Shown here: piece after piece, positions 10,617 to 63,874 of the stretch | How positions within the stretch are numbered: the first letter of the stretch is position 1 | How the letters are laid out: the number at the start of each line of letters is the position of its first letter | IMG/VR virus record: IMGVR_UViG_3300024239_000011 | Coordinates: 248,001 to 312,000 of that record | Direction: 5' to 3' (one strand) | DNA length: 64,000 nucleotides | Program-made: the position numbers and the translations under genes | The notes under the pieces: generated by a model | Databases searched by the model: none | Seen by the model: the letters and a program-made list of their open reading frames with translations, nothing else | What the model was told of the DNA's origin: nothing

Positions 10617-11486
10617 TTATTCCTCGCGATAATTCTTCTCCATTTCACGCATTTTATATTCATGTTCAATCTGACGTGTGAACGATGGGTTGTGACCCAT
10701 TGCTTGAAGCATATCATCGCGAATACTTTGGTTTTTCTTTTCGATGTTTAACACTCTAGTAAAAGATGCAGTAATTACTGCTGTGTAATAGGCAAAGGGA
10801 TTTGGTGTAATTGATCGTGACTCGTCAAATTGTAGTCCAACCTGGGAAAGCTGCACTAGGGCTTGGCTTTTCATTTCGTCAATGTATGTGTAACCGCGCC
10901 AATTTCCGCGTTGACTATATTTGTCCACCAATTTCATGAACATAAAAGCGAGCCGGTGGGTAATTTTACCATGGTCGGTGCAGAATTGATCACCTTTCCA
11001 ATGGCTCCGTAACACTTCAACAAACTGCCCGTCTTTGAGAATGTAGTGTTTAAAGGGCGGGAAGTTCATCCGTGCCCGTTCTTCGTCCTCTCCGTCTGCA
11101 TTTTTCTTTTTCTTCTTGTATTCCGGTGGAATGTGTTCATCCGTCATGACGCGGAATACGAGATTTTCAGTTTTGATATCATCAGCCGATGTATTGACTT
11201 GAATTTCTTGGGGGCGAAATCCCATTTCAAGCAATTCTTCTTTTTTCTGCTTGGTGACGCGCTCGGCGTTATTCGCCTTGGCTGTTTGAATCATTTCTTC
11301 GGTGATATCGGACAAACGACCTTGTTTTTTCTGATCACCGCCCTCACCAACGATAATGTCGTAGTATCGAAACCTATCCTGTTGATACTCCGGATCAAGC
11401 AATGAGCAATAGGTTAGCTTTGATTTGTGTATTTCGATAAGGAGTTCCTTGTTAGACAAGTAATTGATGCGTGGCGGTACTGACAT
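10617..11486 (-). CDS. gp55: T4 gp55-like late-transcription sigma factor
   Basis: NYLSNKELL, NWRGYTYIDEMK, QFDESRS..NPFAYYT, EKK.Q.IRD. Confidence 0.92.
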   Translation of the reverse strand: MSVPPRINYLSNKELLIEIHKSKLTYCSLLDPEYQQDRFRYYDIIVGEGGDQKKQGRLSDITEEMIQTAKANNAERVTKQKKEELLEMGFRPQEIQVNTSADDIKTENLVFRVMTDEHIPPEYKKKKKNADGEDEERARMNFPPFKHYILKDGQFVEVLRSHWKGDQFCTDHGKITHRLAFMFMKLVDKYSQRGNWRGYTYIDEMKSQALVQLSQVGLQFDESRSITPNPFAYYTAVITASFTRVLNIEKKNQSIRDDMLQAMGHNPSFTRQIEHEYKMREMEKNYREE

Positions 11487-53600: not shown

Positions 53601-53632
53601 AAATGCTTGATTACTTGTCTTTTCTCGACCAT
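38666..53632 (-). CDS. Giant (4988 aa) baseplate/virion structural protein
   Basis: Uninterrupted 15 kb ORF; YINEVKPYHSKIR; YFDTDRPH..PWEM; four W/Y-x4-Y-x2-(G/N)D CBM5/12-like repeats; RVLVKNQ...ENGIY fibre motif; TAAATA at 53664-53669. Confidence 0.85.
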   Translation of the reverse strand: MVEKRQVIKHLPSVLQSQTLQRFFGATVDHLFQPQASEVVSGYIGRYPLYTDPEKDFYIQEPSKTRQDYSMEPIAISRATETASVTHALFYDDLLNHLRFHGGLINDHNRLFDNEFYSWCPPVDIDKLMNFKRYYWMPRGPKPIEILSLTDVERTLVGNTDYPLIFTGKYRLPSDDSITEPHDGTVEPLTLTSGMRLTIRRDVNSDQFNNKTFIIEGVGVSAFLIEEPEGEGGHRWDDLGRYTVTPYVFFIEDPNTDIQNFITTINGKKYFDFSGHYKRANQDNPWRPFDPMTPPDVTDPYDDKWEASYASPSEPIALTNNMLIIFVTYGFEQVTKYTYKTCMYKVAGVGKEINLRIEPFGWDAEQGLGWGSVALATTSARPDYLVMERGCIDGNPWSRGNRWFHEDVVARADRGTDDAIRAERPIIEFKRNLELYQYGQRRVGDVDVKEDVLTFTQINGFAASNPDFIHNQPPLREFGIAPLLLDVSARGKNWVDTANDPTSTWFVDAGSYTIDLSNPTMGLGLTPDEALRAVFYFNDRPVRIGFDYRINANNTLSIRKPTGTAQTKITAIIWDTEKGILIRDGMTILITNDPNPEYNNRIYRVSGIKSTGRVVLSPVIVGENESGLPSVGDTIRSRYGFSNLDRDFRFDGDNWIEVQRKTHSNQPPLFALYDIDGVALDDPGRYPESTFAGSRVFGFTDEASAGVPMDTILEMRVKHSASGHPIYKNYLTTERFNYALDKDEITGYYFHRTQKIDGSFDYSNDWYLVDMPSRQRIKHTYISTEGQTDFAISHNLTVDELIDPDAISVMVNAEELNLYTDYSVSDGVVSLRNGVAKNNLVTIYTYVRRAPDNLVGVYEVPFNLQGNPDSREVSEISYNEFFDHFTTILKSQKNFNGNVYGVNNYRDTPKDRSFGRVILQHRAPMLKTMIMASDQNIDFMLSIQYAEHEFSRFRNKFIRKIVDIYEQGIDRLISPEDFVNRALEEINVGKTVDFPFAYSTMCPAGDNFKVFEVSVDCFTGVNEYLIPGTRENIEKSFVYLEKNGEFPKLLDRGWDYETDVDEIRLLGDFSLNETDKIRLIRYDGYFTYVPPSPSQMGIYAIFRPGMVVDETLLNPRQFIQAHDGSYIESFTGEYEFLNSVVLEFEKRVYNNSSLRFAQRGAERIFDHRRYVSGKFRRPASEGGAGYLTDYSWAEWNSIIRPAFERWATMSRVNYRENQTWIADNPFTWNYGAVPDRDGQPLPGHWRGIYLYYFDTDRPHTHPWEMLGMSQKPDWWDAHYGVAPYTRGNTKLWGDLENGIIARGPTAGTYSEYQRPGMSQYIPVDDLGNLIDPVSAGICSRLPTAFEAQQEWKFGDHGPTETAWRRSPNFPFAATMSGYLIKPVRLIEYCWDTVRLKEIYRNQKQTRQWVYDDIRARRPHSYLTLHGEESSEVDLPQRYRVTGVQQWVCDYIKSRGQDITEAFGKVIRGIDVRLGHKMAGFVDQNTLQARADNFGLVPSENINVFLYRSPSIADHTYSGVIVQWTGRGWKVFGYDVVDPVFRTIPSDINGRKTKVAVGKTEKTGRPWQAHVVYTAGDIVVNQGVEYKCIDNHRSGEEFGDSFWKPLDLGPNNKGITVIHYLDANRAGNILNVPYGTEFYNPQDVFDFLVDYGRWLKKDGWVFEQMDFANEETIDWVSVGKDFLFWSLGRWAPGNTIALSPASKYVKFVTDHGEVQNIERIVRGAYSMLNRDGFMIQPRETDVSRVGNELVVTSRNDQLIYLTRLFVSEVEHVIIFDNVTIFNDLIYDPVFNLRQPRLRLSATRSMDWVGRMDAPGFIVTDNVLIPNFEKTVDDFRHFFGIEDGVDNPTLRNYSLHLVGYQGRAYMNDLLLDPKTEFQFFQGAMRQKGTSDAMQKLLRSFFVLDAEEVKFFDEWAFRVGNYGGVTNKLTFEFLLRQREVRSRPQLVEFFANNSTIADLPNDDVVNIPLEVQSWAPNTFYSKYEEVKFDNRYYSVLSAHTSASTIVEDIDAGRLVETENRWVVKPNREMETIFPLRAINETREGDLPVAGYARVDESDHYALDLTDLSSVHYEILQKGKNFVTGEKIWVYDINDEWQMFSVQNLGTAVVNVTKVEYVSDTETKITVSDTHNLAIDDLIVITTDTKSIPDVRGIHYVKSVPSTTEFIIPVVIDDMFDWTSQGGTTGPAVMKFFPRRFATISARNATLNTGQWLSGDLAYVDDAGNGKYAVYQYNGNNFDTIPVRIQPAKVDNNRIFNAVIYDKKTTEVQQYVHLYDPAKGIIPGTADAEIWYKLEIDPAVYNNGDPKYHRMNPEIAWGGGEEHRLWWDLSTVKFLDYEISDNKYRKYVWGRLAPRATIDVYEWTRSTVPPTEWARQVEINKGKAIEAFDAKPTGSVKDANNPAWCERTEYDPATGDYKTVYYFWVKNKATVPPVEWRKLTTTQVAKFIENPSTFDMPWFAPISPDATIISGVDYLLNDENSIVQVNYRRTDREDNVHREWVLMREGDDRSYPDPLLWRKMTDSLVGFNVEYMDVPDLSLSTVERYGNLFRPRQSWFNDRYMARRIIVERVNTMLTKRPVMQGDLTYLQSSDEGLLTFTEKSPRALVAQKHVGSSIGLLAKIDVDLATATIDGNVDLTGGTFPGTIDRVFVREGNRVLVKNQIDATENGIYVYHENDKVFVRATDCAAGSHLPEGANIYVRRGNDNRGTKWIQCVSNAVVGVDNNNWFEVVGDLDYHMEVDSFDERNAKEIDPDFVLERGTRVLVRGNTSTYGFWSLWSYDPTVAGRWSCDAVQHYKTIDFWSTVDWYDTGYSKLNIPRYVFPSEVERDIHDREVGFSAGDLIRIDKKDIDLWYWQEYQGKVDGEAFGRWKMVAYKNGTIKLSDRFYDESRRQIIKDNHPTDLNAYWETVRLRDGSLEFKAMLKALMGDADIPGLLSKGEINALFFAMVHYAHTEHRMVDWAFKTSFLFIKGINEPLIQEPVLRKDKTDSIIGYINEVKPYHSKIRDFTLSKILPMETGHARVTDFDKPVFPLDRTIKDHAVIDVVWNGDGTYTIADPYTATDFRNSRHHKDWYENFQKIADDHYPVRSMKTTIHFDRVKWIDWYVDGEQALLKLYREHYGQREESTTKRAHRLGDRVWFHNYDGLNQDHWKVVYLRSPNHPIPTRIASLKPGASNRVIVKTPANHNVVAPHYDMNPSAYDANISYVVGDIIRWRTKNYLCIKSYVSTGDFDGEKLKHWSDAIPQIAAYVVIPQPIPEVVLTGDGHTKLFELPFRVDEHDLEVYVDGRLLDWATTANYYTDGDALEISRDNDAKTYTPDYEIVSMEQREDIVIRGTSTGTIALKNIPYHESTISVKVKRNLRGVKAWAAEKVYVVNDLAKHSGSVFVCTTSHTSVDFATDQSNWELITPDAIIPRNGTPRVTNADPLYTFMYGNGQIVMISPTPKSGDQLMITYKTDPGVRLRINETPKDGQTIYIRRRSQTTMVGAYKVMKYVDANTIEIKASLPSDIIFGSDNIPMNLLTYRDDVLTLVNEKGDNITVPYDNTMDPNLLTQAERIMLYYRPTPGMPAKDMRELLDINFKGTRMDGGDLLDTKFSEDVGNHVPVMNFVYNGQDEVPVTYWQDGMDNSLGWGDHIFDSIRDKMDGDVVVVEYNGIVQLSDAYDFYYNTTEDLWKVRFNALPNHGDLITVAVVTNDIVDGVETTMSEKKSTRYYDMNIMGGTFTAPASTSGFDDVIVDGGFFLAGPSKTFEALDGQQDFQLDGAPVVGVIGSADDLNWHARVYVNGRRRLDGYHLENIAGTWHVIFDESVVQGTEVRIELQGKPAMTNPYMDENRPQELIATRTADSLGITVYTEATAGAPSVVSARYEADDVTTHFELRQKPSSRETVFVTVGLDGENMMLEMVSRNPMTGDPLFSSDTAVRADQYYLHWDTGVVELGIAPPKGAVIKITSFSTGGTNVENIDTFVSVGVGEFTLTKLPAATPNIRVWTQAGTQPVTEITEFNVIEQQLFLGVAPTEGTLVTVTYEIEDAASNDFQNNQNQRIVEIARFSPTNGIMPPLMLKNPEGITYSQSHISVVRDGEVLSLGDYSVIKHDTGTHEVVLTDGEPGEVAIVAFNTPNIVKVRTHQYQYTAGEPIILTDVPSPTVPHHGAVLVYKKITEADLICENGQPAGTSIGDPLVADDVGRGIRLMPPTTRYFLGDGGCFAYRFERPITSVADTQIWIGQNTTPLVPVYPAGTVGGDATGTVDVGSFTIPQRFRGPIDANDALPCDGDDDLKAGDYFVIEGYFGFDDGGYDGVPFDNTPKPEGTNVRNWLGVAFAGTWATKGMNRPNPNQTNQNEFGFEDGDMILYLGRGRWSRMITSAGMRNTGNYAASLARAVEEATREIHFFDAPSKNADICFVWYEHGKYDYDIKNGNELHLYGPTFAGLTLEDGDWITVTTFSDDEAMGIRTEVFTATVNGKYPLTRVPSDANSLWVNTNGRRNIYGMDYTIQNSTIGWDNLSWDAYFGWDDNRSRPLVSFNNRHSGDWRVVVTTFTNRSAQQPVGFRLFKNSQDEWEYLRIADAHKTKLNTALDFDDRHMQVVDAKVFVTNNEAAILSRKDVTMYATTATLVVNIDLLSSTPVPPVHVVVSDNAAGGAADGIITHADIAMAINSNADLRAVTISAAITEHGHLIIRRVDGQDFSISDSASDALATAFFGNNVVSSVRPLLTPEAVFVDGERIEYMGIDVVNNRLLNIRRGTGGTSSGIRNIYRNHMEVSDGLKEEFILPGWFDPMNDDAVMIKAEYVDHGKVMVKEYRKESYTVTRNDTDEVVVKFPYAPTEGWVLTFSATVSNWEISGASYPAGTIVVDGGAPQYIPGGYRWEGLLDKGFQGQLDAIPVGTKGVTQADAGRWYQLSRAYDAELLDIRVIIEHEGFVDPETGETRTIEEQLIRYQDWFIDGTILKFRRNIPAPTNGQNNIILHLRSYRGLQYSNSAMAQFLREKPATHYWGN

Positions 53633-54746: not shown

Positions 54747-55358
54747 ATGCCCTACGACCCCAGTGCTTTCATTCACTTCGCGATGCAGAACGGCGTGTTT
54801 CCTGAAGGCGGGAAGTACGGTGATCGTATTACCTTCACCATCCATGCGCCCAATAATCTAATGTTGGTGTTGGACGCCGGGCGGAATACCGGGGTACTGC
54901 CGCCCTCGTTGGAGTTCGACAAGCGCAACGGTAAGATCACCAAGGTCTGCAATGGGTTCGACAAGTACCCCGAAATGCTAAAGTGGATAATCACCTGCTA
55001 CGTGTCCCAGCGCGTCACCCGTATGACTGGTTTGAAGGTAATCAAGATGACCCAACTGGTCGATTACGACGCTGCCACCCAGGAATTCGACAAGATGGGT
55101 CGCGGCGTCCGCTCTGGCATTCGTGACTGGTTCACGCGCCTGGGGCAGGACATGCTTGCGGTACCAGTGATGGAGGCGCTTGCCCTCACCGAACGTGCGA
55201 TGATACTGCTGTCGAAGTTGACGGAAGAACAGGCGGATGTTCTGTATGAGGAAACGGAAACCGTGCGTCGCAAGTCGCAATTGGGTTTAATCGAATATAT
55301 GTCGGAGCAAGAGATTCTGGTTGAATTGCTCGACCAGATTGAGAAGGAAGTTCAGTGA
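54747..55358 (+). CDS. Hypothetical protein abutting the repeat array
   Basis: GGAG RBS; stop codon 6 nt before the first repeat; no Cas motif recognised. Confidence 0.75.
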   Translation: MPYDPSAFIHFAMQNGVFPEGGKYGDRITFTIHAPNNLMLVLDAGRNTGVLPPSLEFDKRNGKITKVCNGFDKYPEMLKWIITCYVSQRVTRMTGLKVIKMTQLVDYDAATQEFDKMGRGVRSGIRDWFTRLGQDMLAVPVMEALALTERAMILLSKLTEEQADVLYEETETVRRKSQLGLIEYMSEQEILVELLDQIEKEVQ

Positions 55359-55364
55359 TCATTT

Positions 55365-56284
55365 CTGTCGCACCACGATCCGTGGTAATTTCTTAGGTAC
55401 GGTTTGTCCACCATGGTACTATCGCACCACGACTGCCGTGGTATTTCTTCGCTTTTACGGCTGGGTCCATGGCCACGCCCGTCTTTCGGACCACGAGCAG
55501 ATTGCCGTGATATTTGCTTCAAAGAAAGCACAAGGAATGGCGCTCTGCGAAACACTTTCGCACCACGATTGCCGTGGTATTACCAACATTCACGGTAATG
55601 GTTCTGAATCTGCGGCTTTCGCACCACGAGCAACCGTGGTATTGCCTTCCAACGACAGGAGGAATGCATGCGCAGTCTTTCACTTTCGCACCACGAGCAG
55701 ATTGCCGTGGTATGTTTCCCTGATCGGGACGACATCTACGCCCTGTTCAGACTTTCGCACCACGAGCAGATTGCCGTTGGTATTGCTTCGCGCGACCTGA
55801 TCAATTTCCTCGAAGAGATTCGCCTTTCGCACCACGGGTGAATTGTCGTGGTATTTGCTTCCGATGAAATGGAACATGCCGCCAAAACCGACGTACTTTC
55901 GCACCACGGGCAAGTTGCCATGGTATTGCTTCACCAGCAAAAACAGACCGCATGTCGCGATGGTCAGCTTTCGCACCACGGGCAAATTGCCGTGATATTG
56001 CTTCCAGCTTGGTCACCACCAGCGTGTCGCCCTCGCGCTTTCGCACCACGGGCGAATTGCCGTGGTATTGCTTCTCTGACTATCGCCAAGCAGCAGGTCG
56101 ATCTCTATCGCACCACGGGTGAATTGCCGTGGTATTGCTTCCCCCGGCAACTACCTTGCCTTCGTCCATGTTGATCCTTCGCACCACGGGCGAATTGCCG
56201 TGGTATTGCTTCCCATAGCTGCTGGATTTGACAGCATGATGTTCGAGCTTTCGCACCACGGGCGAATTGCCGTGGTATTGCTTC
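55365..56284 (-). CRISPR. CRISPR-like array, 14 repeats and 13 unique spacers (about 26-35 nt)
   Basis: Plus-strand consensus CTTTCGCACCACGGGCGAATTGCCGTGGTATTGCTTC (37 nt); starts at 55365, 55419, 55483, 55555, 55616, 55683, 55752, 55824, 55896, 55968, 56038, 56105, 56176, 56248; hairpin ACCACGG/CCGTGGT; decay increases leftward; minus strand ends in GAAAG (orientation inferred). Confidence 0.9.
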
Positions 56285-56344
56285 ACCGCGCGCCCTGAGT
56301 ACACGTAGCCGTCATGTAACGGGCTGTCATGTGCAGTTATCGAT

Positions 56345-56488
56345 GCATACCACGGTTCTCGTGGTGCGAACGACACCCTGTTCAAGGGCGTCGATTTGTA
56401 TTTGGTAATACACCACGCCAATCGTGGTGCGACAGCTACCTACAATCGTTGCCAACAGTCCTATAACAATACCACGACAATCGTGGTC
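56345..56488 (+). CRISPR. Three inverted degenerate repeats with two spacer-sized gaps
   Basis: ATACCACGGTTCTCGTGGTGCGAAC, ACACCACGCCAATCGTGGTGCGACAG and AATACCACGACAATCGTGGTC are reverse complements of the short-loop variants in the main array. Confidence 0.75.
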
Positions 56489-56563
56489 TTTTTATTTGCC
56501 ATACTATACAGACAGGTGTATGCATGTATGCATGAATGATTAACCGAATCATGAGGTGCAAAT

Positions 56564-56974
56564 ATGTCCTACCCTACTCGCGAAGAAATCCAAGCTGCCG
56601 CTCTGCCGCTGATGAAGGCTCAACAGCTTCGTCTTGGCTTCTATGTAACTGACGATATTGTGGCAGAACTGGCGAAGGAATTCGGCGTCGATCTCAACGA
56701 GAAGATCGAAACCGGTCGCAGCAAGTTCGGCAACCTGTTCGACTGGGTGACTGCTCGGATGACTTCCACCGGGCAGCACGTCAAGATCAAGCCGAAGCAT
56801 TATCGGCTGGTGCTTTTCCCGTCTGTGACCGATCAGCGGGATGCCAAGGTGGACCACAAGACGGCTCCATCCAAGAATGATTTGTTGCTCAAACTGGCAC
56901 AGCAAATCGACACAATGGCGCAGAACATGGCGCAGATCAACGAAACATTCCGCCAGCTTCAAAAGGCGGCGTAA
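56564..56974 (+). CDS. Stand-alone Mrr N-terminal-like winged-helix protein with coiled-coil tail
   Basis: PT.EE....LPLM...IVAELAKEFG...TGRSKF.N..DW....M...G resembles Mrr_N; no nuclease domain. Confidence 0.6.
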   Translation: MSYPTREEIQAAALPLMKAQQLRLGFYVTDDIVAELAKEFGVDLNEKIETGRSKFGNLFDWVTARMTSTGQHVKIKPKHYRLVLFPSVTDQRDAKVDHKTAPSKNDLLLKLAQQIDTMAQNMAQINETFRQLQKAA

Positions 56975-56977
56975 ACG

Positions 56978-57009
56978 AAGAAACCCCGCCACTGGCGGGG
57001 TTTCTTTTT
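56978..57009. terminator. Bidirectional terminator
   Basis: AAGAAACCCCGCC-ACT-GGCGGGGTTTCTT followed by T. Confidence 0.8.
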
Positions 57010-57017
57010 CGAGTTAT

Positions 57018-57251
57018 TCACCAACACTCTTCGCATCGCAATTCGAATACCGTGTCTTGATCACAGTTTTCGGGGATCGTCACTTTCAATTTCGCTCGAT
57101 CTATGTGAAGGATGCGTAGGGTGATTTTCACCGTGACATCAGGAAAGATCACAATGTCGTCAACCAAAGGGACGACAGGCATTGTTTTGGTGAATGATCT
57201 GCTCGACATACCATGGCGAAATGTCATATCGAATAAGACGAGGTATTTCAT
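57018..57251 (-). CDS. Hypothetical protein
   Basis: ATGA overlap with the upstream ORF. Confidence 0.55.
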   Translation of the reverse strand: MKYLVLFDMTFRHGMSSRSFTKTMPVVPLVDDIVIFPDVTVKITLRILHIDRAKLKVTIPENCDQDTVFELRCEECW

Positions 57252-57925
57252 TCCGCTTCGTCCCATTCTTTATCAAACGGACGGATGAATTCCCACCGGT
57301 CATTACACCAACGGATATGTTCACATGGCACTTCACTGTATGGGGTTTTACGCCCATCAATCCAGTCGATCTGCACTCTCTTGGTGTCCGTGTCGATAAT
57401 GACCACTGTACCTTCGCGGTCAGCGTCCTGCCACACCGAATCGCCTTCGAATAGGGTGTGTTCGGTTTGTTCCAAACGACGTTCAAGGGTTGCCATGATC
57501 TCTTCGGCTGACATGGCATACCGTGTGACAACGGTATCCGGTCCCAACAGCCCAAGTGCCCGTGATACCAGCCCATCGATGAAACCAAGTTTCACCCCAT
57601 CACTGGCTTCTTCACCCGCCAGTGTGGACATGAGGCGTGCTGCCATGATTGCTTCGAGGTAGATGTCCAGCTTGGCGACCCGGTGATTGTCGAAACCACC
57701 CGCATAAGCATGTAAGGCACGCGCCAATTCGGCATGTCCGATCCCAGCTTCGTCCGACATGGCATTGAGTGCGATGAGCAGCCCGCGCCCGATATCAGTC
57801 ATCACGTCGTCGGGAACATTTTCACCGCCATGGATACCACGCACCATCAGCACGGAGTTGACCAGATCGACTACTTGCTGGGCAATGACCATTGACAACC
57901 GATCACCAATCACATCTTCAGCCAT
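57248..57925 (-). CDS. Hypothetical protein
   Basis: GAGG RBS before MAEDVIG. Confidence 0.65.
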   Translation of the reverse strand: MAEDVIGDRLSMVIAQQVVDLVNSVLMVRGIHGGENVPDDVMTDIGRGLLIALNAMSDEAGIGHAELARALHAYAGGFDNHRVAKLDIYLEAIMAARLMSTLAGEEASDGVKLGFIDGLVSRALGLLGPDTVVTRYAMSAEEIMATLERRLEQTEHTLFEGDSVWQDADREGTVVIIDTDTKRVQIDWIDGRKTPYSEVPCEHIRWCNDRWEFIRPFDKEWDEAE

Positions 57926-58052
57926 TTTGCCCTCAGTCCCTTTGAAAAGGATAGGATAACGATACTCGGTATGCGTGTCAAGCCGGTGAATTAAAGCCAG
58001 AGATAAATATTGGTTAAATACCACAGACGGTATTTCAGGGGATGGTATTACC

Positions 58053-58637
58053 ATGAATAAGAAGCAAACAATTGCAAAATGCGAAGTTGATGATTTCTTT
58101 GATAAGGGCGGTGCTACCGCCATGGGTCACATCTTCATTCATGACCCGGAAACCGGTGAAGTATTTGTGAATAAACGTAATGCGATTCACTACGAATCAT
58201 TTTCTATAGCCATCATCAAGGCATTGGCCCAAAAACAAGACGGGCACATTTACACGATGGCATTTGGTAATGGAGCCTCGGCGGTATCTGGTATTGGAAC
58301 GATCACTTACTTGACCCCAAATGTGGTTGGGTATGGAGCAGAATTGTATAACCAGACTTACGCTAAGAACATTCTCGAAGACAACATGGAAGTTCGTCAT
58401 ACCCCTGGTGAACTTTATACCGATCTTGTTATTCGAGTAACATTGGGGTTTGGTGAACCCTCAGGACAACGTGCTTTTGATGACGCGATTAGTCTTGAAG
58501 ACGCTTATGTTTTTGATGAAATTGCGTTGAAAGCATTTGACGGCACTTTACTTACACATGTGATTTTTCACCCTGTGCAAAAAAGTTTGAATAGACAAAT
58601 CGAATTAGTTTATACCATCCGCGTCGCGATGGTTTGA
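58053..58637 (+). CDS. Baseplate/tail structural protein
   Basis: NAIHYE, MAFGNG, FDEIALK, LLTHVIFHPVQKSLNRQIE..YT; TAAATA at 58004 and 58015. Confidence 0.75.
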   Translation: MNKKQTIAKCEVDDFFDKGGATAMGHIFIHDPETGEVFVNKRNAIHYESFSIAIIKALAQKQDGHIYTMAFGNGASAVSGIGTITYLTPNVVGYGAELYNQTYAKNILEDNMEVRHTPGELYTDLVIRVTLGFGEPSGQRAFDDAISLEDAYVFDEIALKAFDGTLLTHVIFHPVQKSLNRQIELVYTIRVAMV

Positions 58638-58649
58638 TGTGCGGATACT

Positions 58650-58682
58650 AATGAAAAACGGCGGGAACCCGCCGTTTTTCAT
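58650..58682. terminator. Bidirectional terminator
   Basis: ATGAAAAACGGCGG-GAAC-CCGCCGTTTTTCAT between convergent genes. Confidence 0.8.
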
Positions 58683-58723
58683 TACGTACTCATGCTATTC
58701 CTCGAATTTCTTGTTCCGTGGGA

Positions 58724-59740
58724 TTAATACACCAATTCGTCTTGTTCGTGACCTTCGTAAATGATAATCTGCCCGGATACCGCCAGTTCCTTAGCAATAA
58801 CGACGATGAGCGACTGCGCCTGATCCACGTCGCGTAGGCGTACTGGTCCCATTGCGTCCATGTCTTCCTTAAGCATTTTTGCCGCACGTTCGGACATGTT
58901 CTTCATGAACAAGTCTTTGATGCCATCAGAGGCACCCTTGAGCGCCAGGGACAGTCGGTCTTTTTCCACCTGACGCAGTAATGTTTGGATACCAGCGGCA
59001 TCCAAGCGCACCAAATCCTCGAAGGTGAACATCAGCGCCTTGATCTTTTCCGCCGATTCGCGGTTGCGTTCTTCGAGCGAGGACATCAAGCGGTTTTCGG
59101 TGGTGCGGTCGAGGTTGTTGAAAATATCTGCCATCAATTCGTGGGTATCGCGGCGTTGGGTGCGGGCGAGGTTGCCCATAAATTCGGTACGCAAGATATC
59201 TTCAACCTGATCCAACACTTCCTTCTGTACCGCCTCCATACGCAGCATGCGCATCACCACTTCCATGGCGAAATTTTCCGGCAGTAGTGCCAGCACGCGG
59301 GCGGCGTGGTCGGGCTTGATCTTGGCCAGCACGACGGCGACGGTCTGCGGGTATTCGTTCTTCAGGTAATTGGCCAGCACCGCTTCGTTGACGTTGCCCA
59401 GCTTGTCCCACATGGTACGACCAGCGGGACCGCGAATCTCTTCCATGATTCGGCTGGCTTGATCGCTGGGTAATGCCTTAGTGAGAAGTCGTTCCGTGCT
59501 TTCGATGGAACCGACTAGCGTACCAGTGGTCAAAAGGTTGTCTGCAAATTCTGCATACAGAGTTTCGATCAATTCAGGCGTAACGGTGCCTAGGTTCGCC
59601 ATGATCTGCGACACTTCCTTGATTTCGTCATCATCAAGGCGGTGCAGAATTTGCGACCCGTGATCTTCCCCGAGTGCCATGAGGAAGATGGCGGCTTTTT
59701 GTGGACCCGTCAGGCAACGATAGTCGGTCTTTATCGGCAT
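58724..59740 (-). CDS. fliG: Flagellar motor switch protein FliG, alphaproteobacterial type
   Basis: [54 protein letters not shown]; full length; TAAATA at 59769-59774. Confidence 0.97.
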
Positions 59741-59818
59741 TTTTCACCTGTTTGCATCAACGATGCCTTATTTAACCGGACAAAGGTGAAGAAATATCCG
59801 AGGAAAGTCAATAAGAGA

Positions 59819-60082
59819 TCAGCCCAAAATGGCGACTGGAAGCACTCCATGGTATTGCGGATACCGATGCCCCAGCACCGTTTTGGGAATGAATACGGTG
59901 GACACTTCACCGCGATGAGCCGCGATGATCATATTCACCTGAAAGAACTGGTTGGGGTGTGACGTCATCCAGGCAGTTTCCGCTTTCTTATGCGCATCCA
60001 GGGCAGATTCCGCCGTCACGGTGATTGCATTCACTGGGTCGCCGTTGCCGTATGGGGGTGTAATAACGGTGAACTTGGTCAT
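59819..60082 (-). CDS. Hypothetical protein
   Basis: GAGGG RBS; lies between ate and fliG. Confidence 0.6.
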   Translation of the reverse strand: MTKFTVITPPYGNGDPVNAITVTAESALDAHKKAETAWMTSHPNQFFQVNMIIAAHRGEVSTVFIPKTVLGHRYPQYHGVLPVAILG

Positions 60083-60084
60083 GA

Positions 60085-60807
60085 TCAGTCACCCTCGTTT
60101 TCCAATGGTTGCCACCCGTTCGAGCCGCAGACTTCGAGCGGTTTGAAGCGGGTTTTATATTTCATGGTTTGTGCCCCTTTTACCCAAAATCCCAGATAGA
60201 AATACGGAAGGTTTTGGCGTTTGAGTTCTTCAATTACCCAGAGGATCGCAAAAGTACCTAGCGACCGTTTATCCATGGACGGCTCGAAGAACTGGTAGTT
60301 TCCAGAAAACCCGTCATTCAATCGGTCGATCAGGGTCACTCCGATAAGATGCCCATTGGCATCCCGGAATTCGTATAGGAACGTTTCAATCGGGCTGATC
60401 TCAACCATCGACCGATAGTCCTCAAAACTCATCAACGCCATGTCACCGCCAGTGTGTCGCGTTTCCTGATAGCGTGTGAACAATCCGTATTGTTCCTTGG
60501 TCGCAACATTCTTCACGCGAGTAACAATCAAATCGGTATTTGTCTTGATAATTTTGCGCATGGTGCGGTCAGGAGCAAACCCATCAACAACAATACGCAC
60601 AGATTTACACTCCGAGCAGCCCGTGCAGGTTGGAGTATAGATGATGTTATGACTGCGCCGATAGTTTGACGCTGCCATATCACTATAAAATTTCTCGGCA
60701 TTTTTCAGGCTGGAAATTTCAGTCACGGTTTTACGTTCAGCCCGTGCCGGAAGATATGGGCACGGCAGCGGTGACGTTGTGAAGTAATATGGAGATTTTC
60801 TCGTCAT
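60085..60807 (-). CDS. ate: Bacterial ATE/Bpt family aminoacyl-tRNA--protein transferase
   Basis: PCPYLP..ERK, YRRS...Y.P.C..C..C.SVRI, Y...RH..G.M, SLGTF.IL, YLGFWV, M.YK.RF.P.E. Confidence 0.93.
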   Translation of the reverse strand: MTRKSPYYFTTSPLPCPYLPARAERKTVTEISSLKNAEKFYSDMAASNYRRSHNIIYTPTCTGCSECKSVRIVVDGFAPDRTMRKIIKTNTDLIVTRVKNVATKEQYGLFTRYQETRHTGGDMALMSFEDYRSMVEISPIETFLYEFRDANGHLIGVTLIDRLNDGFSGNYQFFEPSMDKRSLGTFAILWVIEELKRQNLPYFYLGFWVKGAQTMKYKTRFKPLEVCGSNGWQPLENEGD

Positions 60808-60881
60808 TGAACACCTGTGATACACCACCCGCCATGTTAGCGTTCTGGTTGTGCATTGTCAATGATCGCCTAAATACGATC

Positions 60882-61073
60882 ATGAGGTATTACCATATTA
60901 CAATTCGCTACGGTGGAACTAAAAAAACGCCTTTTTGGGATGAACCAAGAACGTTTTCGGTATGTGCAGATCGCGAAGATTTGGCACTCGAAGAACTTTT
61001 GCGCCGGTACCCAAGGTATCTTGGATTTGAGGTCGAACATATTGAAGAAAGCCTCATCTCAGAAAACGCATAA
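60882..61073 (+). CDS. Small late hypothetical protein
   Basis: TAAATA (60871-60876) 5 nt before the ATG. Confidence 0.55.
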   Translation: MRYYHITIRYGGTKKTPFWDEPRTFSVCADREDLALEELLRRYPRYLGFEVEHIEESLISENA

Positions 61074-61119
61074 TAAAACTACCGGCTAAATATCATCATT
61101 ACCATTTGGCGTAGGTGGA

Positions 61120-61929
61120 ATGATGGCGATTACGTATACACTTAATAAAACAGATGGAACACAACTTTGCATTGTAAATGAGCTTGTTGAAGATACAACC
61201 ACAATTCCATTGGCGCTTTTTGGTAAAAACCGACTTAATTACGGTAAAAAGCTAAACGAAAATTTTGTTAAGCTACTTGAAAACTTTAATGACGCTGCCG
61301 CGCCATCCAATCCTCTTATCGGGCAATTGTGGTATAATCGTACAACAGGCGATCTCAAGCTATACAATGGTACAACATTTGCTGGTTTGAACGCCGATAC
61401 GTTGGACGGCGTTCATAGTGATGAACTGTTGCTAAAATCTCAAAATTTAGCAGATTTACCAGATAAAGCAACCGCGCGTAGTATTTTGTCCGTGTATGAA
61501 AAAACACAGGTATATACCCGAGCAGAAACGTACTCAAAAACTGAAGCTGAAAGTTTATTTGTCAATGTATCCGGCGACACCATGACCGGGTTCTTGTCTC
61601 TTCATGCTGACCCTACGAATGCACTTCACGCCACCACCAAACAATATGTGGATAACCTCGGTGCCTATGGTCACACCGATAACCCAACCATCGCCGCTGG
61701 TACCTATGTGGACTACAACCTTCAGACTATTTTTGCAGACGCAGGGTATGACGCGAGGGCGGCAGATGTTGGTGTGAAGGTTCTCGACGTAACTAGTGGT
61801 TCGCCAACTGAGAATTGGTATATTGACGCAGGAGCGGTTGCAACTATTGCAGTAAACAATACCACAGTGCGAATAATAAACGAATATACGTCGGCACTTA
61901 CTTTCTACATCACAATTATCAAGGTCTAA
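61120..61929 (+). CDS. Tail-fibre/baseplate-associated protein
   Basis: YTLNKTDG, LFGKN..NYG..LNENFVKLLENF, P..GQLWY, GDTMTG.L, HATTKQYVD; TAAATA at 61087. Confidence 0.8.
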   Translation: MMAITYTLNKTDGTQLCIVNELVEDTTTIPLALFGKNRLNYGKKLNENFVKLLENFNDAAAPSNPLIGQLWYNRTTGDLKLYNGTTFAGLNADTLDGVHSDELLLKSQNLADLPDKATARSILSVYEKTQVYTRAETYSKTEAESLFVNVSGDTMTGFLSLHADPTNALHATTKQYVDNLGAYGHTDNPTIAAGTYVDYNLQTIFADAGYDARAADVGVKVLDVTSGSPTENWYIDAGAVATIAVNNTTVRIINEYTSALTFYITIIKV

Positions 61930-61930
61930 T

Positions 61931-63874
61931 ATGATCACCCGCACATACTACCGCGCAAATGGTAATTTCATATTGGTCCCTGACCGTGGTGTCAAAACCG
62001 CAGCGGACTACTATGGCTATAATACTTTATATGCGTCATCTGCTGCTAGTGGATATCAGGAAAGCTCAAAGGTCACCTTGCACTTGTACGAGGACATGAC
62101 GACTGGAAAATTGAGCTTGCACGTCATAAACGACATGTCCCAGGGATTGGGTGATACCGGTGGTGGTGCTAACTATGTTGTGGTGGATAATCTTCCGACA
62201 GGACATCAAGTAATTGCAGCGGATGATCCTGGCGAGGCATGGTCTAATAGTACGACACAGGCTATTGGTAATTTTGGATGGGGTGATTGCTGCACTGATG
62301 GTATGGTAATCGATAATATTCAAGATATGACTGCAATTATGATTACCTGTTCTGGGTATAGCGGCGTTGATCAATTCAAGCTTGCGAGCTATGATGGACG
62401 CATTCAATATCTCCCTCTGACAACAACACTAACAATCGAGAAGATTGTCGAAGAGATAGACGAAACATTGTTTTTACAAGAAAACCCGGTCGCAGGGCAA
62501 TACACAGGTTCTCAAGTTGTATCTTTTACTAAGGCGGCGAATGTTACTGCTAAAATCGCGCTCAATGCCACCCCATCCAATTCAAAAATTATCGCATATG
62601 ACGCCAATGAAAATCCATTCATTGCGGTCGTTGATGACGGGCGTGGACGTGTAGTCTTTGATGGCGGGTTCCCTAGATACTACAACTCAAATTGGAACGG
62701 GGTTGGGTATTACACTCTGCTCAAAGCAGAGCATATGTTTCTCTATCAATGCATGAACTGGATTGTCAATCCGGTAAAGGTTCGTAATGGTAATAAGTCA
62801 ATACTAATATTCAATGACAGCATCACTGGTGAGAATTACCCACTCAGTTCGTTTAATACAACATTGGATGGGGTTGCCGCGATTGCCGGTTATACTCTTG
62901 TACACAAGGATCGGTCAAGCTTTGGGGCAGGAGATCAAGTAACAATCCCATTTGTTGAACTTGATCAGTATGCAGCGGTTATTGTGTTTTCAACAAGATA
63001 CTGGGGTTCGCCCAGTATTACGGCAGAAACCGGGGCAAATTTCAAGATATACCGGGAAGCCGGAAACGGTATTATGGTGATCACGGACCATTCCGATGGC
63101 ACAACGTCATTTCAGCATACCGCGAACGTTATTGCAAACCAGTTTGGGGCTAATTTTTACGGGTCTGTGGATAGAACCCCCGTCGCAGTTTCGACGTTGA
63201 AGCAAAATTATGGCGTCCATCCTCTTTGGAATAATATCCCTGGAAGTATTGTTGGGGGAGGTAGTGAAGGTAATATATCCGTCACCAATTTCCCTGATTA
63301 TAATGACACGTCGTGGGTAATTGATCCGGCAGACATTTACACCTTTAATGCTCTTGTCCAAGACGAGATTGGGTTCTTCTATCATTTCTCATTTGGATAT
63401 GCAATTGGCGTTGATGAACCGATACAATTGAATTTTTCACCGGAGACATTGAAGGATGTGGTGAACGTTGATTTCTACGTCGCTCAATATGCCGGTACTA
63501 CGAGTGGGTTTGTGATTGATGCCATCGGAAATGTCCTCGGGTCATTTCGTAATGATGGGACGTTCTCAATGACGTGGTACGATCCAGATTTCGCGACCGT
63601 ACAATTGACGAAAGGTGATGCGCCAATTGTAATCAATATTCGTGTTACGCATCCCTTCTCGTATACCAAGAAAGTTTCTCTGATACGCTATGTGAAGGCG
63701 TGCAATCCTTTAAGTTCATCTTCAATTCTTGATGCACTTCATGGTGCTGAGTTGCGGGATCATCTTGGATCACCAGCAAGGATTATTCGTGACTTCCGCG
63801 ATATTACCAATAATGATCCAAACAAGAAACCATCATTTGCGCTGTCATATCTGTACTACTATTTGCTTCCGTGA
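61931..63874 (+). CDS. Putative virion/tail-associated protein
   Basis: Long ORF coupled to the fibre gene; GRVVFDGGFP, VITDH motifs; function not recognised. Confidence 0.6.
   Translation: MITRTYYRANGNFILVPDRGVKTAADYYGYNTLYASSAASGYQESSKVTLHLYEDMTTGKLSLHVINDMSQGLGDTGGGANYVVVDNLPTGHQVIAADDPGEAWSNSTTQAIGNFGWGDCCTDGMVIDNIQDMTAIMITCSGYSGVDQFKLASYDGRIQYLPLTTTLTIEKIVEEIDETLFLQENPVAGQYTGSQVVSFTKAANVTAKIALNATPSNSKIIAYDANENPFIAVVDDGRGRVVFDGGFPRYYNSNWNGVGYYTLLKAEHMFLYQCMNWIVNPVKVRNGNKSILIFNDSITGENYPLSSFNTTLDGVAAIAGYTLVHKDRSSFGAGDQVTIPFVELDQYAAVIVFSTRYWGSPSITAETGANFKIYREAGNGIMVITDHSDGTTSFQHTANVIANQFGANFYGSVDRTPVAVSTLKQNYGVHPLWNNIPGSIVGGGSEGNISVTNFPDYNDTSWVIDPADIYTFNALVQDEIGFFYHFSFGYAIGVDEPIQLNFSPETLKDVVNVDFYVAQYAGTTSGFVIDAIGNVLGSFRNDGTFSMTWYDPDFATVQLTKGDAPIVINIRVTHPFSYTKKVSLIRYVKACNPLSSSSILDALHGAELRDHLGSPARIIRDFRDITNNDPNKKPSFALSYLYYYLLP

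What the first reader, a model, noticed from the sequence alone, without database searches (positions are those of the whole stretch)
58724..59774. Full-length flagellar rotor gene fliG under a phage late promoter
Seen: an intact 338-aa FliG with EYPQ, MFTF and torque-helix charges, no other flagellar gene in the window, a TAAATA 28 nt upstream and its own terminator. Known: FliG links the C-ring to the stator and its excess disturbs motility. Inference: late-stage control of host swimming, for example stalling rotation to block flagellotropic competitors or prevent progeny adsorbing, or altering dispersal before lysis.
Basis: partly seen in the sequence, partly recalled or inferred. Interest (0 to 1): 0.78.

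Follow-up and report, generated by a model that had tools for sequence, protein, structure and literature searches.

The report
Giant phage carries flagellar rotor gene
A huge bacteriophage (at least 543 kb, probably about 870 kb) carries an intact copy of its host's flagellar rotor gene fliG behind a T4-type late-promoter motif, and elsewhere in its genome it also has fliM, two fliN, a flagellin operon and cheY-like genes, so the phage appears equipped to take over the swimming motor of the cell it infects.

Summary
Window 58724-59740 (-) encodes an intact 338-aa FliG with all three Pfam domains; it passes the NCBIfam fliG equivalog cut-off. EYPQ, MFTF and the torque-helix charges are present. 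TAAATA lies 28 nt upstream, and a perfect hairpin terminator lies downstream.

- **Not a chimera.** The gene sits among Atu_ph07-like virion genes. The same junctions occur in other assemblies and in about 1%-divergent strain variants. Its GC3 has drifted towards the phage value.
- **Late promoter, in silico.** TAAATA is the most enriched upstream hexamer in the genome (129 seen, 11 expected). It heads the neighbouring structural operons, and the window encodes a gp55-type late sigma factor. However, fliG's site has the least typical flanks of 99 sites.
- **Terminator.** It is bidirectional and shared with the convergent gene.
- **Not a lone gene.** The window holds no other flagellar gene, but the genome also encodes FliM, two FliN, a membrane-anchored FliG_C fragment, flagellin-FlbT-FlaF, CheY-like proteins and a GGDEF-EAL protein.

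FliG is about 80% identical to Magnetospirillum FliG and sits on a very long branch. Its changes concentrate in the FliF-binding N domain; the FliM- and stator-facing domains are conserved. I favour late retuning or rebuilding of the host switch (0.42) over stalling (0.30). No precedent was found.

The parts
58724..59740 (-). fliG coding sequence, 338 aa, full-length flagellar rotor/switch protein (FliG_N, FliG_M, FliG_C)
   Evidence: ORF. Pfam, three domains. TIGR00207 above cut-off. About 80% identity to Magnetospirillum FliG.
59744..59749 (-). Shine-Dalgarno sequence AGGTGA, 4 nt before the ATG
   Evidence: Read from the sequence.
59754..59766 (-). Small 5-bp stem-loop (GCAUC-GUU-GAUGC) in the predicted 5' leader, with no U-run after it on the minus strand, so not a terminator
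   Evidence: Sequence. Listed as a hairpin on the plus strand.
59769..59774 (-). TAAATA, the core of a T4-type (gp55-dependent) late promoter, 28 nt before the start codon; its flanks are non-consensus (GT before, A after)
   Evidence: Genome-wide enrichment: 129 observed against 11.1 expected, Z 35. Modal distance 20-34 nt. The same motif lies 27-32 nt before adjacent structural genes. Flank score is the lowest of 99 sites.
58650..58683 (.). Bidirectional intrinsic terminator (16-bp perfect palindrome with A- and T-runs) shared by fliG and the convergent virion gene
   Evidence: Terminator scan hits on both strands. Fold -32.4 kcal/mol, z -5.45.
59819..60082 (-). orf87, a small phage-type hypothetical protein directly upstream of fliG on the same strand
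   Evidence: ORF. No Pfam, PHROG or NCBIfam hit. Atlas neighbours are small viral hypotheticals. Conserved with fliG in other contigs.
60085..60828 (-). Arginyl/leucyl-tRNA-protein transferase (ATE/Bpt type, N-degron pathway), first gene of the minus-strand insert
   Evidence: Pfam ATE_N and ATE_C. NCBIfam NF002343 scores 290.7 bits against a cut-off of 267.
60834..60862 (-). Sigma70-like promoter TTGACA-17-TAACAT in front of the ATE gene; possible read-through source for fliG
   Evidence: Promoter scan, 10 of 12 matches. TTGACA lies 28 nt before the ATE start.
58053..58637 (+). Conserved jumbo-phage virion gene (phrog_11259; homologue of Atu_ph07 gp177), convergent with fliG
   Evidence: PHROG E 7.5e-56. 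Homologues in 93 jumbo phage records, annotated 'structural protein' in phage CBB. Synteny with Atu_ph07.
61120..63874 (+). Tail-fibre-like gene (61120-61929) and virion structural gene (61931-63874), a late operon headed by TAAATA on the other side of the insert
   Evidence: PHROG tail fibre and virion structural hits. TAAATA 27 nt upstream of 61120.
10617..11486 (-). gp55-type late sigma factor, the probable reader of the TAAATA promoters
   Evidence: phrog_12791 'sigma factor for late transcription' E 2.6e-82 and phrog_234 E 8.6e-19. 40% identity to Atu_ph07 gp694.

Best explanation
This is a resident phage gene, captured long ago from a Magnetospirillum-like alphaproteobacterial host, that encodes a working FliG.

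Shown:
- It is intact and keeps every surface that faces FliM and the MotA stator.
- It lies in an opposite-strand insert (ATE-orf87-fliG) inside a conserved virion-gene block.
- It has a TAAATA motif of the kind that heads the phage's structural operons, and the phage encodes a gp55-type late sigma factor.
- The genome also encodes FliM with an intact CheY-binding peptide, two FliN, flagellin with FlbT and FlaF, CheY-like proteins with complete phospho-acceptor sites, and a GGDEF-EAL enzyme.

Inferred:
- Late in infection the phage makes its own switch-complex subunits.
- These subunits enter or rebuild the C-ring on the host's MS ring through the conserved FliG_M-FliM and FliG_C-stator interfaces.
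- Together with the phage CheY and flagellin, they keep the infected cell swimming but under phage-set behaviour (retuning or sustaining motility rather than abolishing it).
- The diverged parts (FliG_N, FliM_C and FliN) would make the phage ring partly its own.
For: Identity and integrity.

Phage context:
- The neighbours are baseplate, tail-fibre and virion genes related to Atu_ph07 and Phosso.
- The same ATE-orf87-fliG arrangement occurs in an ENA 869,618-bp contig and in a JGI contig.
- Strain-variant contigs from two other runs bridge both junctions. The three fliG differences listed are all at third codon positions, two of them synonymous.
- GC3 is 0.65, against 0.78-0.94 in host fliG and 0.535 +/- 0.105 in phage genes.

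Origin: the best hits are Magnetospirillum FliG at 76-80%, and FliM likewise at 75-78%. In the tree the gene joins the Magnetospirillum/Rhodospirillaceae polytomy on a 0.59 branch, against a median of 0.02.

Conservation pattern: at columns at least 95% conserved in 80 bacteria, the phage differs at 1 of 54 in the M domain and 2 of 70 in the C domain. The torque-helix charges and EYPQ...R are kept.

Partners in the same genome:
- FliM, 224 bits.
- Two FliN.
- Flagellin, FlbT and FlaF.
- CheY-like proteins with DD...D...T...K intact.
- A GGDEF-EAL protein.
- The FliM CheY-binding motif and middle domain are conserved.

Promoter. The T4-family late consensus and its variants are described in PMC2988020. 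The Atu_ph07 late sigma factor is described in PMC6102473.

FliF binding: a model of phage FliG_N with the host FliF C-terminus scored 0.46 against 0.00 for the best control. The tool rates this as weak support.
Against: - At conserved columns, FliG_N carries 10 of 50 changes against 3 of 124 elsewhere (p = 2.6e-4). Yet the host FliF C-terminal peptide it should bind is nearly invariant. The anchor domain is therefore not under normal cellular constraint.
- The phage also has a membrane-tethered FliG_C fragment that looks like a decoy. A second, unrelated huge phage has only FliG_M and FliM_M fragments. Both fit interference rather than support.
- A motor needs only about 34 FliG (general knowledge). 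A late promoter shared with structural genes might give far more than that.
- FliG, unlike FliM and FliN, is reported not to exchange in assembled motors (my recollection of Fukuoka et al. 2010, not checked here).
- No FliF or MotA was found in the 543 kb held.
- Expression and any effect on motility are untested.
- The flanks of fliG's promoter are the least consensus-like of 99 sites.
Confidence: 0.42

Rival explanations
1. Motor sabotage. The phage FliG is a competitor that binds FliM and the MotA stator but is poorly anchored to the MS ring. It acts together with the membrane-tethered FliG_C decoy to stall or uncouple the flagellum late in infection. One purpose would be to stop flagellum-dependent phages (including its own progeny) from adsorbing to an already infected cell.
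For: - Divergence is concentrated in the FliF-binding N domain while M and C are conserved, although host FliF_C is invariant.
- The TM-FliG_C paralogue has a predicted membrane helix and an altered torque helix: R285 to H and E292 to Y.
- The unrelated huge phage G001 carries only the mutually binding FliG_M and FliM_M domains.
- fliG has a late-promoter motif of the type that heads the structural genes.
- Phage proteins that block type IV pili for superinfection exclusion are a known analogue (from memory: Tip, Aqs1).
Against: - A poison subunit does not need all five torque-helix charges, the MFxF hinge and the EYPQ...R motif, yet all are kept.
- The N-domain changes are mostly conservative (F to L or Y, M/L swaps, V to A). 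The domain still scores E 3.7e-35 against FliG_N and is modelled on the host FliF tail with weak support.
- The same genome carries positive motility factors that stalling does not explain: flagellin with FlbT and FlaF, a complete FliM, and FliN.
Confidence: 0.3
2. Virion cargo or a non-motor role. FliG is made with the structural proteins because it is packaged and injected into the next host to act on its motor at once. Alternatively, the phage FliG, FliM and FliN build a ring used for something other than swimming.
For: - The gene lies inside the virion-gene block behind the same promoter motif as its structural neighbours.
- The relative Atu_ph07 packages 112 additional virion-associated proteins (PMC6102473).
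Against: - There is no proteomic evidence.
- The insert is on the opposite strand to the structural operons and sits at a variable slot that holds unrelated small genes in Atu_ph07.
- The other motility genes are scattered and mostly not next to virion genes.
Confidence: 0.1
3. Passenger gene. A host fragment was picked up by the phage and is carried with no selected function.
For: Huge phages accumulate host genes. The branch is long, and the promoter flanks are atypical.
Against: - The frame is intact after enough time for GC3 to fall from about 0.8-0.9 to 0.65.
- The M and C domains are almost unchanged.
- The strain-variant differences listed within fliG are all at third codon positions.
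- The gene is co-carried with FliM, FliN, CheY and flagellin of similar origin.
Confidence: 0.07
4. Assembly chimera or host contamination.
For: The gene is 80% identical to a bacterial gene, and its GC is at the 90th percentile of the genome.
Against: - One 92-kb contig covers the region with no differences, and contigs from other runs carrying about 1% strain differences bridge both junctions.
- Synteny is identical in ENA and JGI assemblies.
- Composition is intermediate between host and phage.
- Conserved phage genes lie on both sides.
Confidence: 0.01

Closest known systems
Cellular FliG of Magnetospirillum and other Rhodospirillales (flagellar rotor/switch protein, TIGR00207)
   Same: Same length (338 against 339 aa), same three domains and 76-80% identity. 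It keeps EYPQ...R, MFxF and the torque-helix charges.
   Different: - It is encoded by a phage, away from any fliF-fliG-fliH operon.
- It sits on a branch about 30 times the median length.
- It has 10 changes at otherwise invariant positions of the FliF-binding N domain.
- GC3 is shifted towards the phage value.
- It carries a late phage promoter motif.
Host-derived auxiliary genes of phages that replace labile host parts (for example cyanophage psbA)
   Same: It is a full-length, function-preserving copy of a host gene carried by a lytic-type phage and expressed from phage signals, plausibly to keep a host machine running during infection (inference).
   Different: The target is a motility machine rather than metabolism. 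Several interacting subunits are carried (FliG, FliM, FliN) together with signalling and filament genes. Parts of the subunits have diverged. No precedent was found in the papers searched.
Phage proteins that disable host surface motility organelles for superinfection exclusion (Tip of D3112, Aqs1 of DMS3, both acting on the type IV pilus ATPase; from memory)
   Same: A phage product aimed at the motor of an appendage that phages use as a receptor.
   Different: Those are small novel proteins, not copies of the motor's own subunit. There is no evidence here that the flagellum is switched off.
T4-family late promoters (TATAAATA, read by gp55 with gp33 and gp45)
   Same: - The same core sits at the position expected of a -10-type element, with no -35 element.
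- A gp55 homologue is present.
- The motif heads structural genes.
- Positions -13/-12 vary, as in phage Aeh1.
   Different: The consensus here is [A/C]TAAATA[C]. The fliG copy reads GTTAAATAA, the least typical of 99 sites. No transcript 5' ends are available.
Agrobacterium phage Atu_ph07 and Sinorhizobium phage Phosso (Rak2-like/T4-superfamily jumbo phages of alphaproteobacteria)
   Same: The baseplate wedge is 42-43% identical, and phrog_11259, the late sigma factor and the giant virion protein are shared, in the same local gene order.
   Different: They have no fliG by tblastn. At the equivalent slot Atu_ph07 has three small hypothetical genes on the opposite strand.

Membership tests
FliG (flagellar motor switch/rotor protein) | Three-domain architecture FliG_N, FliG_M, FliG_C over the full length | tested here: met
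   Pfam E 3.7e-35, 9.7e-35 and 4.1e-42. Full-length matches to solved FliG chains.
FliG (flagellar motor switch/rotor protein) | Score above the curated equivalog cut-off (TIGR00207) | tested here: met
   273.8 bits against a cut-off of 226.7.
FliG (flagellar motor switch/rotor protein) | EHPQR-type FliM-binding motif in the middle domain | tested here: met
   E129-Y130-P131-Q132 and R164, identical to host sequences. Only 1 of 54 conserved M-domain columns is changed.
FliG (flagellar motor switch/rotor protein) | MFxF hinge and conserved charged residues of the torque helix that face MotA | tested here: met
   M237-F240; K268, R285, E292/D293 and R301 aligned with Vibrio and T. maritima FliG.
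FliG (flagellar motor switch/rotor protein) | N domain binds the C-terminal tail of FliF (MS ring) | tested here: inconclusive
   The complex model with the Magnetospirillum FliF tail scored 0.46 against 0.00 for the best control, which the tool rates 'weak support'. Ten of 50 conserved N-domain columns are changed while host FliF_C is near-invariant.
FliG (flagellar motor switch/rotor protein) | Encoded within a flagellar operon next to fliF and fliH | tested here: not met
   Hosts have fliF-fliG-fliH-fliN. Here the neighbours are ATE, orf87 and virion genes. No FliF is found in the 543 kb. This is a feature of the locus, not of the protein.
FliG (flagellar motor switch/rotor protein) | Generates torque in, or assembles into, a flagellar motor | not testable with these tools
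   Needs complementation and localisation experiments.
T4-type gp55-dependent late promoter | TATAAATA-like element at about -10 with no -35 requirement | tested here: met
   The TAAATA core is present 28 nt before the ATG. The genome-wide consensus is [A/C]TAAATA[C]. fliG's flanks are the least typical of 99 sites.
T4-type gp55-dependent late promoter | Phage encodes a gp55-family sigma factor | tested here: met
   Window 10617-11486 (-): phrog_12791 E 2.6e-82 and phrog_234 E 8.6e-19; 40% identity to Atu_ph07 gp694.
T4-type gp55-dependent late promoter | The motif precedes late (virion) genes | tested here: met
   The motif lies 19-32 nt upstream of a virion structural gene (11614), a baseplate wedge gene (24121), the giant virion protein, the tail-fibre gene and the phrog_11259 gene.
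T4-type gp55-dependent late promoter | Transcripts start just downstream of the motif late in infection | not testable with these tools
   No infection transcriptome exists. The single RNA run holds only three short contigs.
Moron-like accessory insert in a phage structural region | Own promoter and terminator, inserted between genes that are adjacent or conserved in relatives | tested here: met
   Promoter motifs and terminator. At the same place Atu_ph07 has unrelated small opposite-strand genes between the gp177 block and the radical-SAM genes.

The most novel reading that the evidence does not exclude
The phage builds its own partly orthogonal switch complex on the host's MS ring: phage FliG with a re-tuned FliF-binding domain, FliM carrying a PopZ-like N-terminal tag and a diverged C-terminal domain, and two phage FliN. 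It drives this ring with its own CheY and clothes the flagellum in its own flagellin. In effect it takes over the navigation of the infected cell (virocell taxis) before lysis. This would be the first virus known to encode the rotor of a bacterial flagellar motor.
Probability: 0.25. Interest if true: 0.92.

Novelty: new variant of a known kind. Interest (0 to 1): 0.8.

Why it matters
Phages are known to use flagella as receptors and to carry host-like metabolic genes. I found no report of a phage encoding the flagellar rotor or the whole C-ring. FliG and FliM are essentially absent from 50,697 GenBank phage records and 2.9 million IMG/VR contigs; the exceptions are this phage and one unrelated huge phage that carries fragments.

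If the proteins act on the host motor, infected cells would swim to the phage's advantage. That would extend the 'virocell' idea from metabolism to behaviour, and it would bear on dispersal and host finding in stratified habitats where Magnetospirillum-like bacteria navigate.

The phage copies are also natural experiments. The FliM- and stator-facing surfaces are frozen, while the MS-ring anchor and the FliM_C/FliN base have drifted. This may show which C-ring interfaces can be re-engineered.

It is directly testable in genetically tractable, non-pathogenic Magnetospirillum strains.

Tried and rejected
- **Megablast of the 8-kb region against GenBank phages:** no match.
- **tblastn of FliG against GenBank phages:** five records, all 'UNVERIFIED'. 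The best one is a bacterial fliF-fliG-fliH-fliI-like operon by ORF layout, so none counts as a phage fliG.
- **IMG/VR scans:**
  - FliG alone found only the G001 FliG_M fragment.
  - A FliG alignment added one 19-kb contig at 33% identity, not followed up.
  - FliM alone found nothing, and a FliM alignment found G001 again.
  - Host FliF found nothing.
- **Homologues of the TM-FliG_C protein among 5.8 billion proteins:** only its own cluster.
- **Own-genome searches:** FliF absent. MotA gave only a 14.5-bit chance-level hit.
- **The 869-kb ENA contig and the 326-kb JGI contig** could not be searched because they are not held. Absence of FliF and MotA therefore applies only to the 543 kb.
- **Predicted FliF-contact residues:** only 3 of the 10 phage-specific N-domain changes are contact residues, against about 27% expected, so I make no claim of an interface-specific change.
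- **orf87:** no family and no informative atlas neighbour.
- **Rfam** on 55000-61500: only a chance-level sRNA hit. No tRNAs in the window.
- **RNA run X5:** too little sequence to show transcription.
- **Literature searches** for phage-encoded FliG, C-ring or flagellar genes in huge phages found nothing relevant.
- **Donor within the Magnetospirillum group:** unresolved (polytomy, long branch). I did not run an AU test.
Full report
**1. What is at the coordinates**

The minus strand of window 58724-59740 holds a 338-codon ORF.
- Pfam finds all three FliG domains: FliG_N 3.7e-35, FliG_M 9.7e-35 and FliG_C 4.1e-42.
- It passes NCBI's fliG equivalog model, 273.8 bits against a cut-off of 226.7.
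- It aligns end to end with solved FliG chains.

- E129-Y130-P131-Q132 with R164.
- M237-F238-T239-F240.
- The charged residues K268, R285, E292/D293 and R301. In the printed alignments these sit opposite the conserved charges of Vibrio and Thermotoga FliG.

Upstream of the ATG are an AGGTGA Shine-Dalgarno sequence (59744-59749), a small stem-loop, and TAAATA at 59769-59774, 28 nt before the ATG. Downstream, at 58650-58683, is a perfect 16-bp hairpin flanked by an A-run and a T-run. Both strands score as terminators, and it folds at -32.4 kcal/mol, z = -5.45. It is therefore a bidirectional terminator shared with the convergent gene 58053-58637.

**2. Is it really a phage gene?**

The window is positions 248001-312000 of a 543,035-bp IMG/VR virus record. 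The window encodes:
- baseplate wedge and hub proteins, tail lysozyme, several virion structural proteins and a tail-fibre-like protein;
- a 4,988-aa giant protein and a gp55-type late sigma factor.

The nearest cultivated relatives are Agrobacterium phage Atu_ph07 and Sinorhizobium phage Phosso. Their baseplate wedge is 42-43% identical and the local gene order is shared.

fliG is the last gene of a three-gene minus-strand insert (ATE-type aminoacyl-tRNA-protein transferase, orf87, fliG). The insert sits between plus-strand virion operons. At the same slot Atu_ph07 has three unrelated small genes on the opposite strand.

Several results exclude a chimera:
- The identical protein with the same neighbours occurs in an ENA contig of 869,618 bp and in a JGI contig.
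- One run has a 92-kb contig covering 57000-62000 without a difference.
- Two other runs of the same study carry about 1%-divergent strain variants whose contigs bridge the virion-gene/fliG and fliG/orf87/ATE junctions.
- The three differences listed inside fliG are all third-position changes: two synonymous and one E332D in the variable tail.
- GC3 of fliG is 0.65. Host fliG genes have 0.78-0.94 and phage genes 0.535 +/- 0.105. The gene has therefore spent a long time in the phage.

**3. Where it came from and how it has changed**

Among 5.8 billion proteins, the best non-self hits are Magnetospirillum and related Rhodospirillales FliG at 76-80% identity. The species-genome scan gives the same answer.

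In a tree of 80 bacterial FliG plus the phage copy, the phage gene attaches to the unresolved base of the Magnetospirillum/Rhodospirillaceae group. Its terminal branch is 0.59 substitutions per site, against a median of 0.02. Magnetospirillum FliGs are 84-99% identical to each other but only 74-80% to the phage copy. The exact donor is not resolved.

The divergence is not uniform. At columns at least 95% conserved in the 80 bacteria, the phage differs at:
- 10 of 50 columns in the N domain;
- 1 of 54 columns in the M domain;
- 2 of 70 columns in the C domain (Fisher p = 2.6e-4).

The N-domain changes are mostly conservative (F32L, F62Y, V63A, V95A, M/L swaps), with R60T, S70L and R94Q as well.

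The N domain is the part that binds the C-terminal tail of FliF. That tail is almost invariant across the Magnetospirillum group, so variation in the partner does not explain the drift. A model of phage FliG 1-115 with the Magnetospirillum FliF tail scored 0.46 against 0.00 for the best of three controls. The tool itself grades this as weak support. Only 3 of the 10 changed residues are predicted contact residues, which is about chance.

**4. The promoter claim**

I called about 676 genes crudely and compared upstream gaps with the whole genome.
- TAAATA is by far the most enriched hexamer: 129 occurrences against 11.1 expected (Z 35), in 121 of 400 upstream regions.
- It peaks 20-34 nt before start codons, with an A or C preferred just before it.
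- It precedes the tail-fibre operon (27 nt), the phrog_11259 gene (32 nt), the giant virion protein (31 nt), a virion structural gene and a baseplate wedge gene.
- It also precedes fliG (28 nt), one phage cheY-like gene (27 nt) and, further upstream, the flagellin gene (48 nt).
- The window encodes a homologue of the T4 gp55 late sigma factor at 10617-11486: phrog_12791 E 2.6e-82 and 40% identity to Atu_ph07 gp694.

The T4-family late promoter is an 8-bp TATAAATA-type element whose first two positions vary in some relatives (PMC2988020). Atu_ph07's late sigma factor is described in PMC6102473. The 'late promoter' reading is thus well supported in silico.

There are two cautions:
- fliG's site (GTTAAATAA) has the lowest flank score of 99 such sites.
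- The upstream ATE gene has a sigma70-like TTGACA-17-TAACAT promoter with no terminator before fliG, so read-through is possible.

No expression data exist. One wastewater RNA run holds only three 151-nt contigs matching the stretch.

**5. fliG is not alone**

The window has no other flagellar gene, but the genome does (G000 coordinates):

| Gene product | Position | Notes |
|---|---|---|
| FliM, 456 aa | 68291-69661 | TIGR01397 above cut-off |
| FliN, two copies | 69624-70186 | directly downstream of fliM |
| TM-FliG_C, 177 aa | 151814-152347 | predicted membrane helix plus FliG_C only; R285 to H and E292 to Y on the torque helix; no homologue of that architecture elsewhere |
| Flagellin, FlbT, FlaF | 358888-360504 | operon |
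| CheY-like receivers | 323789-324172 and 127374-127820 | two clear copies with intact D-D-D-T-K sites; a third, weaker one at 464174-464641 |
| GGDEF-EAL protein and ClpP | 373456-374871 and 368671-369258 | - |

- No FliF or MotA was found in the 543 kb.
- FliM is 75-78% identical to Magnetospirillum FliM.
- It keeps the CheY-binding peptide and the middle domain, but 13 of 36 conserved columns of its C-terminal FliN-like domain are changed.
- It also has an extra N-terminal segment matching the first 37 positions of the PopZ family model (E 8.5e-7).

The pattern across the set is consistent:
- Signal input (FliM_N), the FliG_M-FliM_M joint and the stator face (FliG_C) are conserved.
- The MS-ring anchor (FliG_N) and the base of the ring (FliM_C, FliN) have diverged.

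**6. How rare is it?**

- FliG hits in 50,697 GenBank phage records are limited to 'UNVERIFIED' records. The best has the ORF layout of a bacterial fliF-fliG-fliH-fliI operon.
- In IMG/VR, scans with FliG, FliM and alignments of each returned one unrelated 359-kb phage, G001, besides this genome. The FliG alignment scan also returned one 19-kb contig at 33% identity.
- G001 has 36% GC and shares no structural genes with this phage. It has a FliG_M-only gene immediately followed by a FliM-middle-only gene.
- Literature searches found no description of phage-encoded C-ring genes.

**7. Interpretation**

Shown:
- an intact, long-resident, host-derived fliG in a phage;
- a genome-wide late-promoter motif in front of it;
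- a companion set of switch, signalling and filament genes.

Inferred: that the products act on the host motor. I favour retuning or rebuilding the switch so that the infected cell keeps swimming under phage control (0.42), for three reasons:
- Every activity-bearing residue is retained.
- The partners FliM, FliN, flagellin, FlbT and FlaF are positive factors.
- The N domain is still a recognisable FliG_N that models onto the host FliF tail.

The rival is interference: stalling or uncoupling the motor, perhaps to block flagellotropic superinfection (0.30). It is supported by:
- the altered anchor domain despite an invariant partner;
- the decoy-like TM-FliG_C;
- the fragment pair in G001;
- the likelihood of overproduction from a late promoter.

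Virion cargo or a non-motor use (0.10), a passenger gene (0.07) and a chimera (0.01) are less likely.

**8. Limits**

- Gene calls for the motif analysis were crude.
- The tree used the quick method.
- The complex score is weak by the tool's own calibration.
- About 326 kb of the probable full genome could not be searched.
- No transcript, protein or phenotype data exist.

Noticed in passing
Whole record G000 (window = 248001-312000); loci L104-L109: The 543,035-bp record is not the whole genome. Other contigs run past its right end into sequence absent from it. An ENA contig of 869,618 bp is collinear with it. A JGI contig of 326,607 bp starts at the junction, and 543,035 + 326,607 = 869,642. 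The genome is therefore probably about 870 kb, larger than the 735 kb usually cited as the largest phage genome and the 831 kb listed in a 2026 data set.
   Followed up: partly
G000:68291-70186 (L096:8291-10186): A phage fliM-fliN-fliN operon. FliM has an intact CheY-binding peptide and a diverged C-terminal domain. It also has an extra N-terminal segment (residues 27-63, 'EPTMEDILTSIRRVLTEDDDD') that matches the start of the PopZ polar-organiser family (E 8.5e-7) and is absent from host FliMs.
   Followed up: partly
G000:151814-152347 (L002:1243-1776): A 177-aa protein made of a predicted membrane helix (residues 10-28) plus a FliG C-terminal domain only, with two of the torque-helix charges replaced. 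It is a possible stator decoy. No protein of this architecture was found elsewhere.
   Followed up: partly
G000:358888-360504, 323789-324172, 127374-127820, 373456-374871, 368671-369258: A flagellin-FlbT-FlaF operon, two CheY-like receivers with complete phospho-acceptor sites (one behind a TAAATA at 27 nt), a GGDEF-EAL protein and ClpP.
   Followed up: partly
L003:9989-10896 (IMGVR_UViG_3300035698_035310, 359 kb, 36% GC): An unrelated huge phage carries a FliG middle-domain-only gene overlapping by 4 nt the start of a FliM middle-domain-only gene. These are the two domains that bind each other in the C-ring. It has no other flagellar gene.
   Followed up: partly
window 60085-60828: An ATE/Bpt-type aminoacyl-tRNA-protein transferase (N-degron pathway) lies directly upstream of fliG, with a phage ClpP elsewhere in the genome. 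The phage may mark proteins for Clp degradation. Any link to FliG is unknown.
   Followed up: no
window 55896-56284: A tandem array of about six copies of a 70-71-nt unit in an intergenic region. Each unit holds a hairpin (CCACGGGCAAATTGCCGTGG). It matches no Rfam family.
   Followed up: no
window 38666-53632: A 4,988-aa ORF with a weak CBM_5_12 hit, preceded by TAAATA. It sits in the same position as the 13.3-kb virion structural gene gp180 of Atu_ph07.
   Followed up: no
window 59004-59504 in run X4 (and X3): Short contigs at very high depth (up to about 4,600x, against about 9x for the phage) match the conserved middle of fliG at 90% or more and then run on into unlike sequence. They come from an abundant bacterium with a similar fliG in the same sample, which is a candidate host.
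   Followed up: no
GenBank MT835480.1 (L099), OR846819.1 and related 'Listeria phage' records: The only GenBank 'phage' records with a FliG hit are flagged UNVERIFIED. The best one shows a fliF-fliG-fliH-fliI-like ORF layout, so it is probably bacterial DNA filed as phage.
   Followed up: partly
L107:8260-9459 (just beyond the right end of G000): An IS605 OrfB/TnpB (Cas12f-like) gene lies in the part of the genome missing from the 543-kb record.
   Followed up: no
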